64,000 nucleotides of DNA, taken from NCBI RefSeq assembly GCF_037042905.1, contig NC_087258.1:13144001-13208000 (forward strand), given 5' to 3'. Made by a program: the position numbers and the translations under genes. Source of the stretch: Lytechinus pictus. Its lineage: Eukaryota. Numbering within the stretch: position 1 is the first letter of the stretch; the number at the start of each line of letters is the position of its first letter. The notes under the pieces are model-generated. The model was given only the letters and a program-made list of their open reading frames with translations. It ran no database searches and was not told the origin of the DNA. Shown piece after piece: positions 15,085-26,046 of the stretch.

Positions 15085-18000
15085 ATGCGTGAGATTGTCC
15101 ATTTGCAAGCTGGTCAGTGTGGAAACCAAATCGGTTCTAAGGTATGTAAATCAGACAGCCAATATTCGATCAAATTACTGTTTTATTTCCCTTTATATTC
15201 CCTCTGGGCAATTCCATATAATAATCTGTACCGTTTCGTATATCCGACACATATTTCTCTCCATTCTTAGTTCACTTCATGGGCTGCTCAAGCCATGATG
15301 ATTTGAGAGCAACACAAATTTCCATATGAACTAGGAAACCTAGATAATTTATTTTAGGAAGGTGCCAGGGTTTGGACATATTTCAAGGCTGGGATGTCCC
15401 CCTTTATCATGAAGTTGAATTCTCAGTTTGTTTGAAAAATAAACTCATAAAACTGATGCTGATTAGATTGTTTTCTTGTCCTACATTGGGTCTGTAAGGT
15501 TGTCTCTGAATCATAAATTAACAACAAAAATGAACCTTTAAAACTATATTTTAAATGTCGAGAAATCTTTAAAAATTCCTGAATGTATAGAAAATTATAT
15601 GGGTCCGTTACATAAAAGTTGCTATTTTGGTAACGATGTCATCCAGTGGTAACCACTATGGTAATAGTGCTCATCAGCCAGTCCAAATCAAGGACTCATT
15701 GAAAGTTATCATTGGATGGCAAAGTTACCATAATTGTAAATTTTATGCAACGTTGCCATGGTGGTTCTAAATACGGGACTGAAAAGTGTTTTTTTTGTAA
15801 GTGTGTATAAATATAGGCACATCTCAAAAAGTAAGTTCCACTCAATCTGTTAAATAAAAATGATGTTACTTTTCAACTGGAAGGTTTTGAGCAAAAGTTC
15901 TTGAGAGCTTTCTACTGATACAGTACCGTTAAGGTTAAACATGCCTTTGAGTCAATCCGCATTTATAAAGGTGAAGTTCACCCTGGAGAAAAGTTTATGG
16001 GTGAATGTTTGAGGAAGATCCATTAAAGATTAAAAAAAGTTAATAGAATGTGAAGTTTGGGATTTGTGACGTCATAAACGAGCAGCTGCCCCATATGTCA
16101 TGTAATATGAAATGCATAAATTTCCATTTTCTAATGGTTAATGATGACTTATTTTTTGTTTTCTTTTTAGAAATGGATGTGAAATGATTTTTCTATTGTT
16201 ATACTGAAGGTACAGTAAAAACCATTTTGAATTTTCTGAGAAAATGGCATTTCATTGATTTTTTTACCATACCATGTAGGAAAGCTGCTCGCATATGACG
16301 TCTCAAATCAAATAATTAAAAAAACTTTTTTATTCATTGATGGACTTTTCTCAAACCTCCGGCATTACTTTTTTATTTTTTTCTGCTATTTTTACAATAA
16401 ACTTTTTGTCAGGGTAAACTTTCCCTTTAATACAGGATTTTCATGTTTCAAAAGTCACGAAAGTCATTATACGAAATTATTTGTCAATTATATTTCCAAG
16501 CAAAAATGTAATTGTAATTAATTAATTGTAATTACTTCATCGATTGATCCAGTCGCAATCTGTTTATGATGACACATATTATGTGTCGTGTTTTGTACTG
16601 TATATATAACGTCAATGAAATCTGTTTTTAATGGGAAATTACCAATTTTTCAGGCTTCCTTAATTTCAAATTGATGAATAATATGTCAATATTGTTTTTA
16701 AAAAGGTAGAAACGTTTGGTCAGTATAGCCATTGCAACGAAAGCCGCGTGATTTGAAATTCGTGGGTTAGTTATCATCCGCAAGTCATTAGCCAATCATT
16801 AACTAAATTATATTGATCTTTAGGATTAAAGTTTGTTGTCATATACAAAAAAAGAGATCTTAGTTCTATAACATCATTAACAATGACCCCACCGCCGCTG
16901 CCATGGATAGAAAAGGCTATTTCAATACGTTTCGGAATTTTATTTGAGAACAATATCATCTAGAAATATATAATGCGATGTAAGAACGACGAATTTTGTT
17001 AGACATATCACCTCCATAGGGATAACCTTGGAAGAAAATTAAAACGTCCAAAGTCTACACTGTTAGAAAATGTATCCTTAAGATAAAAGAAGTTCCTGAA
17101 GCAGAGTCTCGAGAACACCTGTAATCTTACCAGATTGCGTAATCTTACATTATATCATGTAAAATTACAGGAAATTGGTATTTGGTGTATGGAACCTGAC
17201 AAATTTTCTTAAATAAAACACTCTTTTCCCCTTTTTAAACAGACCTGTTCTGTTAAATTGCAGAAAAAATCCTGTTTTATGAATTTACAGAATGATTCAC
17301 GTTACTGCTTTCTGCAAAATCTTTTTTCCCCTGTAAAATCAGGTTTTTTTTCTCCAACTCCAATGTTAACATTTAATTCCCCGTGCAAAGGATTGCTAGC
17401 GGTGAGGTTCAACTTTACCAAGCCGCTATTGGTAGACCACAACCCTAATATTCAAATTAAAATTCACGTTATTCACTAATGAAAAATACCAAGAATATGT
17501 TTTAAAAGTAAGAATACATAATAATTATTTCATCACTAATTTCACGGCGTTCTTTAATTTAGATGTCTATCATCACATCACATCATCAGTCTCCCACTTT
17601 TAAGCGGTTGGTTGTGTGTATATTGGAAGGTATGTTGAAAGTAACATGTAGATGCTTTTTGGTTAAAATTTTCCAAGGATAATCATAAGCAACATATATT
17701 TCCCATGCTATAGAAATCAATCAAATAGCCATTATTTTTCTATGTTGATTTAGTTCTGGGAGGTAATATCTGATGAACACGGCATAGACCCCACCGGTAC
17801 CTACCATGGCGACTCCGATCTCCAGCTCGAGCGCATCAACGTCTACTTCAATGAGGCCACCGGAGGAAAGTACGTACCACGAGCCGTGCTCGTCGATCTC
17901 GAACCAGGCACCATGGACTCGGTCCGATCAGGTCCGTTCGGTCAGATCTACAGACCAGACAACTTCGTCTTTGGTCAGAGTGGCGCTGGGAACAACTGGG

Positions 18001-23184: not shown

Positions 23185-26046
23185 ATGCGTGAGATTGTAC
23201 ATCTTCAAGCTGGTCAGTGTGGAAACCAAATTGGTGCAAAGGTATGTGGTTGGCCGGGTTTCATTTTCCCCTTCATTTTTGACATTTTTGGAAATAATTG
23301 TTCGCCTTCTTTGGTAAGAAAAAAAATCTAGCCAGTATCCTCAGGCAAAAAGCGCTTAATAAATCCAGCCAATATTATTATTATTATCATGACCATTATT
23401 ATCATTATTATTATTATTATTATCATTTATGTTATTATTATATAATTATTATGGGTAAAATGAATTAAGTTTGTTAATGAAGTGTCCTCCTTAAACTGTT
23501 AAAGGGGTTCGTGTTACGAATTAAATCTGCGGCCCATTTCATAAAGGACCTGCAACTGTTGTAACTTTATCATTATGGCAACTACCATGGAAACGTTAAT
23601 TATGATTGGCTGCTGAGCCCTGTTACCATGGTAGTTGCCGTAATGGCAAAGTTACAACAGTTGCAAGTCTTTTATGAAATGGGCCTCATGTCTGTTAATA
23701 GTGATTGTATCGTTTCCTGGTTAAATGATATTGACAGTCGAAACGAAAATCCCGAATATCAATTGCAAAGAATCTAAAACTGAACCTTTTCCTAGCAGTT
23801 CGATTCCATTCTCTCTGTTATGATATTCTTTTTTCTTAAACCATTCTTACTTCTTAAACGACTTTAAGTTTACGGAATGAGGCTGTCCCCTTCGGTGAGC
23901 TCATTCATGTAAATGTTGTATAGCCGCGCCACTCGCCCTACTCAAATCGATTGTGGATTGGGAGTAAGGACTAAATGAAAGAATTAAGCATCATTTATAT
24001 GATCATATTGATATACTTATTATCGTATTGTACATTTTTTCAAATTTAGTTCTGGGAGGTGATCTCCGATGAGCACGGAATCGACCCTACCGGTACCTAC
24101 CATGGCGACTCTGATCTCCAACTCGAACGCATCAATGTCTACTTCAATGAGGCTACAGGCGGAAAGTACGTTCCAAGAGCCGTGCTCGTCGATCTCGAGC
24201 CAGGCACCATGGACTCGGTACGGTCAGGTCCCTTTGGTCAGATCTTCAGACCAGACAACTTCATCTTTGGTCAGAGTGGAGCAGGGAACAACTGGGCCAA
24301 AGGACATTACACAGAGGGCGCTGAACTGGTTGACTCTGTTCTGGATGTCGCGAGGAAAGAAGCTGAAAGCTGTGACTGTCTTCAGGTTAGTAAAAGATTC
24401 CAATAAAGACATTTGGGCGGTGCCAATAGAGAAACGGCCCATAAGAGGAAAATTTACTCGATCAACATTATTTTTTTTTTCTTTCCCCCTGTTTTGGCTT
24501 TGCTCCCCTGCCTACGATGCCACCGCCGTGCTAACAGGTATTGATATTTTTGCAACAGGATGATAGTGAACATTATTTTAATTCAAAATAATATATAAAA
24601 AATAAATGTTTATATATTTCTCACGCAAAGGCAGTCGTTTAAAATTCTTCATAAACATTTCACCGAAAATGTCCATTGAGTATTTTCCGTTTCAGAAAAC
24701 TGATTGGCTATCGTACTTCAAGATTTAATACACATAATTCGAAATGTGGACTGAGGTCGGCCCGAAGGCGGTACTATGTGTATATGCTCACTATTTTGAT
24801 TGCCGGACCGGACTGAGTCCACCTAAAAGGCGGCTTGACCAGTGAGCTAGAAATAGGTATCATAGCGAACAATAGTTATTGCTAACTAACAACAGAAAAT
24901 GTTGTGAAAAGACAGGCACATGCGTCACTTGAATAGTCGTCATGGATAAAGAATCTCAAAGCAATTTCAGTCTACCTCTGGTGTATGTGTATACACACCA
25001 AATTATAGGCTTGAAACGGCTTCAAACCCGACGCATGTGTATCTTGGGCCTAAGACAAAATTTCTCTAACTTTACCTTTATTTTCATTTTGTTCTCAGGG
25101 TTTTCAGCTTACCCATTCTCTAGGAGGCGGTACAGGGTCAGGAATGGGAACACTCCTAATCAGCAAGATCCGGGAAGAATACCCAGATCGCATCATGACC
25201 ACATTCAGCGTGGTGCCATCTCCTAAAGTATCTGACACAGTTGTTGAACCATACAACGCAACGCTATCGGTACATCAGCTGGTAGAAAACACAGATCAAA
25301 CCTTCTGCATCGATAATGAGGCTCTGTACGATATCTGCTTCCGTACCCTGAAGCTCACCACCCCCACCTATGGCGACCTGAACCACCTTGTCTCTGCAAC
25401 CATGAGTGGTGTCACCACCTGCCTCAGGTTCCCTGGACAGTTGAACGCAGACTTGAGAAAACTGTCGGTCAATATGGTTCCTTTCCCTCGTCTTCATTTC
25501 TTCATGCCTGGTTTTGCTCCTTTGACAAGCCGTGGTAGCCAGCAGTATCGCGCCCTCACAGTTCCGGAGCTGACTGCACAGATGTTCGATGCCAAGAACA
25601 TGATGGCTGCCTGTGATCCTCGTCACGGACGCTACCTGACAGTTGCTGCCATGTTCCGTGGTCGTATGTCAATGAAGGAGGTTGACGAACAGATGCTCAA
25701 TGTCCAGAACAAGAACAGCAGCTACTTCGTAGAATGGATCCCTAACAACGTCAAAATCGCTGTCTGTGACATCCCTCCCCGTGGTCTGAAGATGTCCGGC
25801 ACTTTCATTGGCAACAGCACCGCCATTCAGGAACTTTTCAAGCGCATCTCTGAGCAATTCACATCTATGTTCAGACGAAAGGCCTTCCTTCATTGGTACA
25901 CTGGTGAAGGTATGGACGAGATGGAGTTCACTGAAGCTGAGAGCAACATGAACGACTTGGTGTCTGAGTACCAGCAGTACCAAGACGCCACCGCAGAAGA
26001 AGAGGGCGAGTTTGAAGAAGAAGAAGAGGAAGAGGAAGAACCATAA
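23185..26046 (+). CDS. TUBB: Beta-tubulin gene 3, 446 aa; exons 23185-23241, 24050-24385, 25099-26046
   Basis: MREI start, canonical splice sites, intact frame, tail [16 protein letters not shown]. Confidence 0.97.
23531..23685. mobile_element. Harbinger-like palindromic MITE in gene 3 intron 1
   Basis: TIR GGCCCATTTCATAAA; nearly the whole element is self-complementary. Confidence 0.8.

What the first reader, a model, noticed from the sequence alone, without database searches (positions are those of the whole stretch)
15085..26046. Sister genes 2 and 3 carry substitutions at benzimidazole/colchicine-site residues (E198Q, T351I, A254S; N165T and I316M in gene 3)
Seen: codon 198 is Gln in both genes (CAG 18414, CAA 25297), while the other four paralogs have Glu. 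Both also share Y51F, V120A, A254S, Q291A, T351I and A387S. Gene 3 adds N165T (25198) and I316M (25651). All six keep F200. Established: E198 is highly conserved, E198 substitutions including E198Q confer benzimidazole resistance in fungi, nocodazole hydrogen-bonds to N165 and E198, and residues 316 and 351 line the colchicine domain. Inference: an isotype subfamily with a remodelled pocket, either less sensitive to natural antimitotics or with altered curved-straight dynamics. The change persists in two copies with different synonymous codons and has resisted gene conversion.
Basis: partly seen in the sequence, partly recalled or inferred. Interest (0 to 1): 0.7.

Follow-up and report, generated by a model that had tools for sequence, protein, structure and literature searches.

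The report
Two beta-tubulin genes lacking Glu198
Two neighbouring, intact and strongly conserved beta-tubulin genes share a rare Glu198-to-Gln change (plus a coupled Ala254-to-Ser change) at the floor of the benzimidazole/colchicine drug pocket, so they form a real specialised isotype pair of a kind also seen in tapeworms and flies; whether this changes drug sensitivity is untested.

Summary
The window holds six intact three-exon beta-tubulin genes. Genes 2 and 3 alone share Y51F, V120A, E198Q, A254S, Q291A, T351I and A387S, at the stated codons. Of the 13 beta-tubulin genes in the genome, no other has them. The N gap is intergenic: it lies after gene 2's poly(A) signals, 3.25 kb before gene 3.

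The two genes are old sisters (98% bootstrap support; dS 0.89). Both are under strong purifying selection (omega about 0.015). The shared changes arose in a burst on their common branch (omega 0.15 against 0.017, p = 0.0006). A branch-site test for positive selection is not significant.

Enrichment in the drug pocket holds for gene 3's lineage only (4 of 10 changes). It is marginal for the shared set (2 of 7). N165T and I316M also occur in other paralogs.

Residue 254 covaries with residue 198 across animals: tapeworm Q198 or G198 with S254, Schistosoma G198 with T254.

Expression was not shown.

Verdict: a real Glu198-less isotype subfamily, and a new member of a known kind. A toxin-defence role is unsupported.

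The parts
15085..15141 (+). gene 2 exon 1 (codons 1-19, [19 protein letters not shown]), GT donor
17754..18089 (+). gene 2 exon 2 (codons 20-131), with Y51F (TTC, 17847) and V120A (GCA, 18054).
18216..19163 (+). gene 2 exon 3 (codons 132-446 plus stop): Q198 CAG 18414, S254 TCC 18582, A291 GCT 18693, I351 ATT 18873, S387 TCT 18981
19548..19574 (+). cluster of poly(A) signals (AATAAA, ATTAAA, ATTAAA) for gene 2, upstream of the gap
19767..19931 (.). assembly gap (165 N), intergenic, flanked by GAT-rich low-complexity DNA
14994..15028 (+). gene 2 proximal promoter/5' block GTTGCTAACGGTCACTTGTCTCATTC(A)TGTTCGAG, shared almost exactly with gene 3
23091..23125 (+). gene 3 copy of the same promoter block. 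The 15-mer GTTGCTAACGGTCAC occurs exactly only at these two places in the 812-Mb genome.
23185..23241 (+). gene 3 exon 1 (codons 1-19)
24050..24385 (+). gene 3 exon 2 (codons 20-131), with Y51F (TTC, 24143), V91I and V120A (GCG, 24350)
25099..26046 (+). gene 3 exon 3 (codons 132-446 plus stop): T165 ACC 25198, Q198 CAA 25297, S254 TCG 25465, A291 GCA 25576, M316 ATG 25651, I351 ATC 25756, S387 TCT 25864

Best explanation
Genes 2 and 3 encode a functional, old beta-tubulin isotype subfamily made by tandem duplication.

Shown: before the two genes split, their common ancestor took seven replacements in a short burst. Both copies have since been held under the same strong purifying selection as ordinary tubulins.

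Inferred: the core of the change is a coupled pair, E198Q with A254S. It lies at the buried floor of the colchicine/benzimidazole pocket, between the nucleotide-binding and intermediate domains. T351I sits on the pocket wall. Gene 3 later added N165T and I316M. In canonical tubulin, Glu198 is a buried and probably protonated carboxyl that hydrogen-bonds residues 165 and 200 and the carbamate of benzimidazoles. Gln keeps the shape and the neutrality but removes the titratable proton. Ser254 probably supplies a new hydrogen-bond partner.

Predicted effects, from mutant data in other organisms: weaker binding of benzimidazole carbamates and other deep-pocket ligands, and altered domain coupling that would change microtubule stability or dynamics.

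The most likely selective reason is intrinsic isotype specialisation for a particular cell type or microtubule array. Drug insensitivity would then be a by-product rather than a toxin defence.
For: Intact models and tubulin domains. The pair forms a clade with 98% bootstrap support in two codon trees. dS between the two genes is 0.89 and dN 0.015. Branch omega is 0.015 for gene 2 and 0.012 for gene 3. The common branch has omega 0.15 against a background of 0.017 (LRT 11.8, p = 0.0006), the highest of 19 branches. All seven shared residues are kept in both copies although five sit on different synonymous codons. A 35-nt promoter block is conserved between the two genes while the surrounding DNA is unalignable, and its core 15-mer is unique in the genome. 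GC3 is 0.55-0.56 against intron GC of 0.32-0.36, and codon usage correlates 0.77-0.90 with the sister genes. Eight runs of the same species (two studies, none on record as RNA, library type guessed or unknown) hold 0.42-0.57 of gene 3's words, which matches its exon share of 0.55. Residues 198 and 254 covary. Tapeworm isotypes have Q198 or G198 with S254, Schistosoma has G198 with T254, and a marine sequence has Q198 with G254. By contrast, 273 of 277 sampled beta-tubulins have A254, nearly all with E198. The effect of E198Q on ligand binding and the predicted pKa of 9.6 come from bioRxiv 10.1101/2021.05.09.443293. The contact residues come from PMC9033620 and PMC12250431.
Against: No orthologue from another species could be examined residue by residue. 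No coordinates were available, so the 198-254 contact rests on helix periodicity (L250 and L253 line the pocket) and on covariation, not on a measured distance. The branch-site test does not separate positive selection from transient relaxation (LRT 2.2, p about 0.07). Four of the seven shared changes (51, 120, 291, 387) are outside the listed pocket residues and remain unexplained. The codon models are my own implementation and the foreground branch was chosen after seeing the data, although it survives correction for 19 branches (p about 0.011).
Confidence: 0.6

Rival explanations
1. Toxin defence: the subfamily was selected because it resists natural colchicine-site or benzimidazole-like antimitotics met in the diet or environment.
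For: E198Q confers benzimidazole resistance in fungi (PMC7053126) and blocks a deep-pocket ligand in human tubulin (bioRxiv 10.1101/2021.05.09.443293). Gene 3's lineage has 4 of its 10 changes in the 21-residue pocket set (p = 0.0007 under a uniform null, 0.004 weighted). M316 is also listed for Colchicum in PMC12250431.
Against: Only 2 of 13 beta-tubulin genes carry the change, so cells that use the other isotypes stay exposed. The shared set is not clearly pocket-enriched (weighted p = 0.11). Glu198-less isoforms recur in tapeworms, a schistosome, and in dipteran and Daphnia alternative exons, which share no toxin ecology. T165 and M316 sit in paralogs that keep E198. The organism and its ecology are unknown here.
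Confidence: 0.1
2. Functionally near-neutral drift: a period of relaxed constraint after duplication fixed a compensated pair (E198Q with A254S) and a few tolerated changes. The proteins now behave like ordinary beta-tubulins.
For: The omega of 0.15 on the common branch is not distinguishable from 1 (p = 0.2). The branch-site test is not significant. If Glu198 is protonated, Gln is nearly isosteric and equally neutral (bioRxiv 10.1101/2021.05.09.443293).
Against: Five of the seven sites are nearly invariant in a sample of 120 beta-tubulins: 198 is E in 116 of 120, 254 is A in 119 of 120, 291 is Q in 116 of 119, 387 is A in 114 of 117, and 51 is Y in 84 of 89. All seven have been held in both copies across dS 0.89. 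The same 198/254 pairing arose independently in flatworms. A private promoter block is conserved.
Confidence: 0.25
3. Silent or decaying copies (unexpressed pseudogenes), or an assembly artefact around the gap.
For: No RNA run on record holds the sequence. Gene 3 has no canonical AATAAA within 1.2 kb of its stop codon.
Against: The frames are open with perfect splice sites. Omega is 0.012-0.015 over a dS of about 0.3 per branch. Codon bias is maintained and the promoter block is conserved. The gap is intergenic. The word share of 0.42-0.57 in eight runs (two studies, library type guessed or unknown) fits exon-only, that is RNA, content.
Confidence: 0.04

Closest known systems
Cyclophyllidean tapeworm beta-tubulin isotypes (Hymenolepis microstoma CDS28127.1, H. 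diminuta, H. weldensis, Anoplocephala perfoliata) and a Schistosoma mattheei beta-tubulin
   Same: Natural animal isotypes with Glu198 replaced (Q or G) together with Ala254 replaced (S or T). The 51-residue stretch 231-281 of the Hymenolepis protein is identical to gene 3.
   Different: They carry L or I at 200 and I at 165, and they lack F51, A120, A291, I351 and S387. Convergence is therefore more likely than orthology. They belong to a different phylum from the one suggested here.
Insect betaTub97EF with mutually exclusive core exons 4B/4C (bioRxiv 10.1101/185827, which cites Findeisen et al. 2014)
   Same: It makes a second core isoform of a beta-tubulin that differs around residue 198. 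In database gene models holding both exon copies, the second copy has L198 (Lucilia), A198 (Ceratitis, Culex), Q198+N200 (Anopheles) or S198 (Daphnia). A291 and V351 accompany it in mosquitoes and Lucilia. The paralog stabilises microtubules.
   Different: There the diversity comes from alternative splicing of one gene; here it comes from duplicated genes. A254 is unchanged there. That the second exon copies in the models I saw are orthologous to 4C is my inference.
Vertebrate class III, V and VI beta-tubulins
   Same: Isotype-specific replacements in the colchicine site, including T351V (PMC3651705, Table 1). T351I here is the same kind of change at the same position.
   Different: Per PMC3651705 they change C239S and A315T. 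Genes 2 and 3 keep C239 and A315 and change 198 and 254 instead. One paralog elsewhere in this genome (L013) has the class-III-like set S239/T315/S351.
Fungal benzimidazole-resistance alleles at codon 198 (E198Q/D/G/K in Aspergillus nidulans and Neurospora crassa) and Naegleria fowleri mitotic beta-tubulin
   Same: The same E198Q replacement. It is tied to benomyl and carbendazim resistance (PMC7053126; PMC12250431, Table 2).
   Different: The fungal alleles are selected single mutations in the main tubulin gene. Here it is a fixed, ancient feature of two out of thirteen paralogs and comes with six other changes.
Sea urchin sperm axoneme beta-tubulin (PDB 8SNB)
   Same: It is the best-scoring solved chain for both gene 3 and gene 4. 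Gene 4's exon 3 differs from it only at 199/200 and in the tail.
   Different: In its aligned residues 132-447 it has E198, Y200, A254, Q291, T351 and A387, so it is the canonical type at those sites. The match hints at an echinoderm genome but does not prove it.

Membership tests
Beta-tubulin (Pfam PF00091 Tubulin GTPase domain + PF03953 Tubulin_C) | Both Pfam domains score above the curated cut-offs | tested here: met
   Gene 3 exon 2 scores 77.8 bits on PF00091. Exon 3 of genes 2 and 3 scores about 90 bits on PF00091 and 151 bits on PF03953.
Beta-tubulin (Pfam PF00091 Tubulin GTPase domain + PF03953 Tubulin_C) | MREIVH start, GGGTGSG nucleotide-binding signature, acidic C-terminal tail with EGEF | tested here: met
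   Both genes have [17 protein letters not shown] and [12 protein letters not shown]. The tails are ...[17 protein letters not shown] (gene 2) and ...[17 protein letters not shown] (gene 3).
Beta-tubulin (Pfam PF00091 Tubulin GTPase domain + PF03953 Tubulin_C) | Near-identity to solved beta-tubulins rather than alpha- or gamma-tubulins | tested here: met
   All of the 60 listed of 72 PDB matches are beta chains (E about 1e-208). Alpha-tubulin loci in the same genome are only about 40% identical.
Benzimidazole-insensitive beta-tubulin (resistance-type residues at 167/198/200) | A replacement at 167, 198 or 200 known to reduce benzimidazole action | tested here: met
   Q198 is present in both genes. 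E198Q is listed among the fungal resistance changes (PMC7053126). F167 and F200 are the sensitive-type residues.
Benzimidazole-insensitive beta-tubulin (resistance-type residues at 167/198/200) | Measured loss of drug binding or of drug effect | not testable with these tools
   Needs recombinant protein or in vivo assays. The only evidence is by analogy with E198Q in human and fungal tubulin.
Expressed tissue-specific tubulin isotype | Spliced transcripts present, with a defined expression pattern | tested here: inconclusive
   eight runs of the same species (two studies) hold 0.42-0.57 of gene 3's words against an exon share of 0.55. Their library type is only guessed or unknown.

The most novel reading that the evidence does not exclude
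Residues 198 and 254 (and perhaps 291 and 351) form a co-evolving switch. It has been thrown independently in several animal lineages: this genome by gene duplication, flatworms by isotype divergence, and insects and Daphnia by mutually exclusive exons. The result would be a distinct 'Glu198-less' class of beta-tubulin with different intrinsic microtubule stability. Insensitivity to benzimidazoles and deep-pocket ligands would be a shared side effect of that physiological switch.
Probability: 0.3. Interest if true: 0.6.

Novelty: new member of a known kind. Interest (0 to 1): 0.4.

Why it matters
Glu198 is one of the three classic benzimidazole-resistance positions and is usually treated as invariant in animal tubulins. 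A pair of ancient, constrained paralogs that replace it shows that animals can hold a Glu198-less tubulin as a normal isotype. The recurrent pairing with residue 254 points to a specific compensating contact. That contact could be tested by single and double reversion mutants. If the genome is an echinoderm's, as the best structural match hints, these isotypes would matter for reading antimitotic assays in such embryos, because different cells could differ in drug sensitivity according to which isotype they use. More broadly, the pair offers a natural system for asking how the buried carboxyl at 198 contributes to microtubule dynamics.

Tried and rejected
They were used only in local scripts for alignment and codon models.

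2. An exact look-up of gene 3's exon-3 ORF in public assemblies found nothing on record. A look-up of one Q198 fragment (P0151) gave only an anonymous 773-bp ENA contig.

3. Three protein searches found no cluster representative with gene 2/3's combination of residues. Orthologues may be hidden inside 90% clusters, so this blank says little.

4. The organism could not be named. Tubulin identities do not discriminate, and the run names are coded.

5. A strict RFX X-box scan of the six promoters gave one irrelevant hit. The shared 15-mer is not a genome-wide motif, since its one-mismatch hits are no more frequent than the control.

6. Gene conversion as the source of gene 3's T165 and M316 is rejected. 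Local identity to the T165/M316 paralog is only 48/63 and 51/63.

7. The branch-site test for positive selection is not significant.

8. Structure prediction was not run, because the tool returns no coordinates and so could not give the 198-254 distance.
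Full report
**What is there.** The window carries six beta-tubulin genes, five on the + strand and one on the - strand. Each has the same three-exon plan: codons 1-19, 20-131 and 132 to the end. All have GT-AG introns and open frames. 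Gene 2 is 15085-15141 / 17754-18089 / 18216-19163. Gene 3 is 23185-23241 / 24050-24385 / 25099-26046. Pfam finds the tubulin GTPase and C-terminal domains in the pieces I could send. All of the 60 listed of 72 solved-structure matches are beta chains, and the best is the sea urchin sperm-doublet beta-tubulin 8SNB.

**The gap.** The 165 N at 19767-19931 lie 604 nt after gene 2's stop codon and about 190 nt after an AATAAA/ATTAAA/ATTAAA cluster at 19548-19574. They are 3254 nt before gene 3's ATG. The flanks are GAT-rich low-complexity DNA, and the only ORFs across the gap are runs of X. The gap therefore affects neither gene. I made no attempt to fill it.

**The observation.** Over residues 1-430 the six proteins align without gaps. 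Genes 2 and 3, and only they, share Y51F, V120A, E198Q, A254S, Q291A, T351I and A387S. Gene 3 adds V91I, N165T and I316M. Gene 2 adds its own set: A18S, F85Y, A124S, A271T, S371T and I381M. A six-frame search of the whole 812-Mb genome finds 13 beta-tubulin genes. Q198, S254, A291, I351 and S387 occur in these two alone. T165 is also in two other paralogs and M316 in two others, all of which keep E198. All six window genes have F200, and five genes elsewhere have Y200.

**Age, relationship and constraint.** Synonymous divergence between genes 2 and 3 is 0.89 and dN is 0.015. Codon-model ML trees place them as sisters with 98% ultrafast bootstrap support, both with exon 3 of all 13 genes and with exons 2+3 of 11 genes.

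I wrote a GY94/F3x4 branch model and fitted it to the 11-gene alignment.
- Background omega is 0.017.
- The branch leading to the pair has omega 0.15 (LRT 11.8, p = 0.0006). This is the highest of all 19 branches tested one by one, and corrected for 19 tests p is about 0.011.
- The two terminal branches are back at 0.015 and 0.012.
- The common branch cannot be told apart from omega = 1 (p = 0.2).
- A branch-site model A puts exactly the seven shared sites in a class with omega about 7, but its LRT is only 2.2 (p about 0.07).

So there was a burst of replacement followed by long, strict conservation. Whether the burst was adaptive or a lapse of constraint is open. Five of the seven sites sit on different synonymous codons in the two genes, and Q291A needed two base changes. 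The shared state is therefore inherited and maintained, not recently copied.

**Signs that the genes are in use.**
- Upstream of the two ATGs the DNA is mostly unalignable, but a 35-nt block (14994-15028 and 23091-23125) is almost identical. Its first 15 bases occur exactly only at these two places in the genome.
- GC3 is 0.55-0.56 against 0.32-0.36 in their introns, and their codon usage correlates 0.77-0.90 with the sister genes.
- Eight runs of the same species, from two studies, hold 0.42-0.57 of the sampled words of 24050-26400. The exon share of that stretch is 0.55. Their library type is only guessed or unknown, and none is on record as RNA.
- Runs of a second, related species hold 0.16-0.19 of the words, as an orthologue about 96% identical would.

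The direct test failed. I sent those letters to no search tool afterwards.

**Are the changes in the drug pocket?** I assembled a 21-residue colchicine-domain set from three papers:
- the parbendazole and ELR510444 structures (PMC9033620): N165 and E198 hydrogen-bond the carbamate, and V236, C239, L240, L246, A248, L253, N256, M257, A314, I316, K350, A352 and I368 line the site;
- the PAC structure (bioRxiv 10.1101/2021.05.09.443293): E198 and Y200;
- a table of residues in the colchicine-binding region, most of them counted within 4.5 A of colchicine (PMC12250431): it includes 312-316 and 349-352.

The results were:

| Lineage | Changes in the set | Uniform null | Null weighted by site variability |
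|---|---|---|---|
| Shared (stem) changes | 2 of 7 (198, 351) | p = 0.04 | p = 0.11 |
| Gene 3 lineage | 4 of 10 | p = 0.0007 | p = 0.004 |
| Gene 2 lineage | 2 of 16 | not significant | not computed |

A254 is in none of the lists. Positions 165, 316 and 351 are among the most variable in beta-tubulins generally. T351V is a standard difference of vertebrate classes III, V and VI (PMC3651705). The unusual sites are 198, 254, 291 and 387, which are nearly invariant in a sample of 120 beta-tubulins.

**A coupled pair.** I searched the protein database with the 46 residues around 198 and with the 51 residues around 254.
- No representative has gene 3's exact 198 context over a full-length protein.
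- Only one representative is identical over 231-281: a Hymenolepis microstoma beta-tubulin, which also has Q198.
- Its cluster holds H. diminuta, H. weldensis and Anoplocephala proteins with Q198 or G198, always with S254.
- Among 277 sequences with a readable 254 motif, the four that are not Ala are S (with Q198), G (with Q198), T (with G198, Schistosoma) and L (with E198).
- A looser BLAST-based table, which includes noisy fragments, still gives Fisher p = 0.0016.

L250 and L253 line the pocket, and 254 is one helical turn from 250. I therefore infer that residue 254 packs beside residue 198 and that Ser or Thr compensates for the lost carboxyl. That is inference, because I had no coordinates.

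A291 shows a similar but weaker link. It accompanies non-Glu198 in mosquito and blowfly genes, and it appeared in none of the sampled proteins that have only Glu198.

**Precedents.** The arthropod hits turned out to be gene models that contain two tandem copies of one core exon. This is the known mutually exclusive 4B/4C arrangement of betaTub97EF, a paralog that stabilises microtubules (bioRxiv 10.1101/185827). In the models I saw, the second copy has L, A, Q or S at 198 in Lucilia, Ceratitis, Culex, Anopheles and Daphnia. Naegleria mitotic tubulin also has Q198 (PMC12250431). In Echinococcus, isotype differences at 165/198/200 are being linked to cell-type differences in albendazole tolerance (bioRxiv 10.64898/2026.09.11.750979). 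The present pair therefore belongs to a known kind of thing: natural isotypes with altered drug-site residues. It is a new instance, made by gene duplication.

**Mechanism.** Glu198 is reported as buried, with a calculated pKa of 9.6, that is, neutral. E198Q human tubulin is expressed but no longer binds a deep colchicine-site ligand (bioRxiv 10.1101/2021.05.09.443293). E198Q is a fungal benzimidazole-resistance change (PMC7053126). Benzimidazole-resistance changes near this region can also stabilise microtubules without any drug, for example Y50S, next to residue 51 (PMC8145593). My best reading has four parts:
- Q198 with S254 rewires the hydrogen-bond network at the floor of the pocket.
- This lowers affinity for benzimidazole-type ligands.
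- It also shifts the coupling between the two domains that sets microtubule stability.
- The isotype is kept for an intrinsic cell-biological role.

A toxin-defence origin is unlikely. Only 2 of 13 genes are changed, and the same solution appears in animals with unrelated ecology. A near-neutral compensated drift remains a serious rival.

**Verdict.** Novelty: a new member of a known kind. The 198-254 coupling and the recurrence across phyla are the most interesting by-products.

Noticed in passing
whole genome G000 (loci L001-L030; C4:20.7-20.9 Mb, C8:22.9-24.9 Mb, C4:30.5 Mb): Besides the 13 beta-tubulin genes, the genome holds well over 30 alpha-tubulin-like loci (about 40% identical to the query). 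Many sit in dense tandem arrays on contigs C4 and C8.
   Followed up: no
G000:C5:53610810-53611745 (L013): One divergent beta-tubulin paralog has A238, S239, T315, S351, M165 and M316. This is the same colchicine-site pattern (C239S, A315T, 351 changed) that defines vertebrate classes III, V and VI.
   Followed up: partly
G000:C2:50395515-50416608 (L010, L004, L007): A second cluster of three beta-tubulin genes with Y200. Two are almost identical (branch lengths 0.01-0.02), so there was a recent duplication or conversion. The third (L010) has its exon 2 split by an extra intron near codon 56.
   Followed up: partly
window 17950-18035 (gene 2 exon 2) against 9732-9817 (gene 1 exon 2), codons 85-113: Genes 1 and 2 share an 84-nt run of perfect identity although they are only 84.5% identical overall. 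Other pairs show runs of 77-98 nt. I expect about 0.01 such runs by chance, so short gene-conversion tracts or constrained synonymous sites probably exist in this family.
   Followed up: partly
window 14880-14910 and 22975-23010; also 31115-31135 (gene 4 upstream): The motif TAACGGTCA (a Myb-like YAACGG core) recurs upstream of genes 2, 3 (twice) and 4. A second conserved gene 2/3 block, TTTATC(A/T)CCATG(T/C)AAACGAA, lies about 200 nt upstream of the ATG.
   Followed up: partly
window 26640-26900, 19680-20090, and 12000-16000 / 20000-22000 by GC skew: The DNA downstream of genes 1, 2 and 3 is G-rich and C-poor (GC skew 0.18-0.26). It has GTGTG/GGGTG-type tracts and GAT/GAA repeats, and the assembly gap falls in one of these tracts.
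   Followed up: no
proteins P0008, P0015, P0016, P0018, P0121, P0122 (database hits): Several arthropod beta-tubulin entries of about 500 residues are gene models that read both mutually exclusive core exons in series. The apparent extra 56 residues are an annotation artefact. Daphnia and Blattella models show the same duplication, so the arrangement may be older than Diptera.
   Followed up: partly
window 26047-27250: Gene 3 has no canonical AATAAA or ATTAAA within 1.2 kb of its stop codon, only variants (AATATA, AATACA, CATAAA). Genes 1, 2, 4 and 5 have canonical signals.
   Followed up: no
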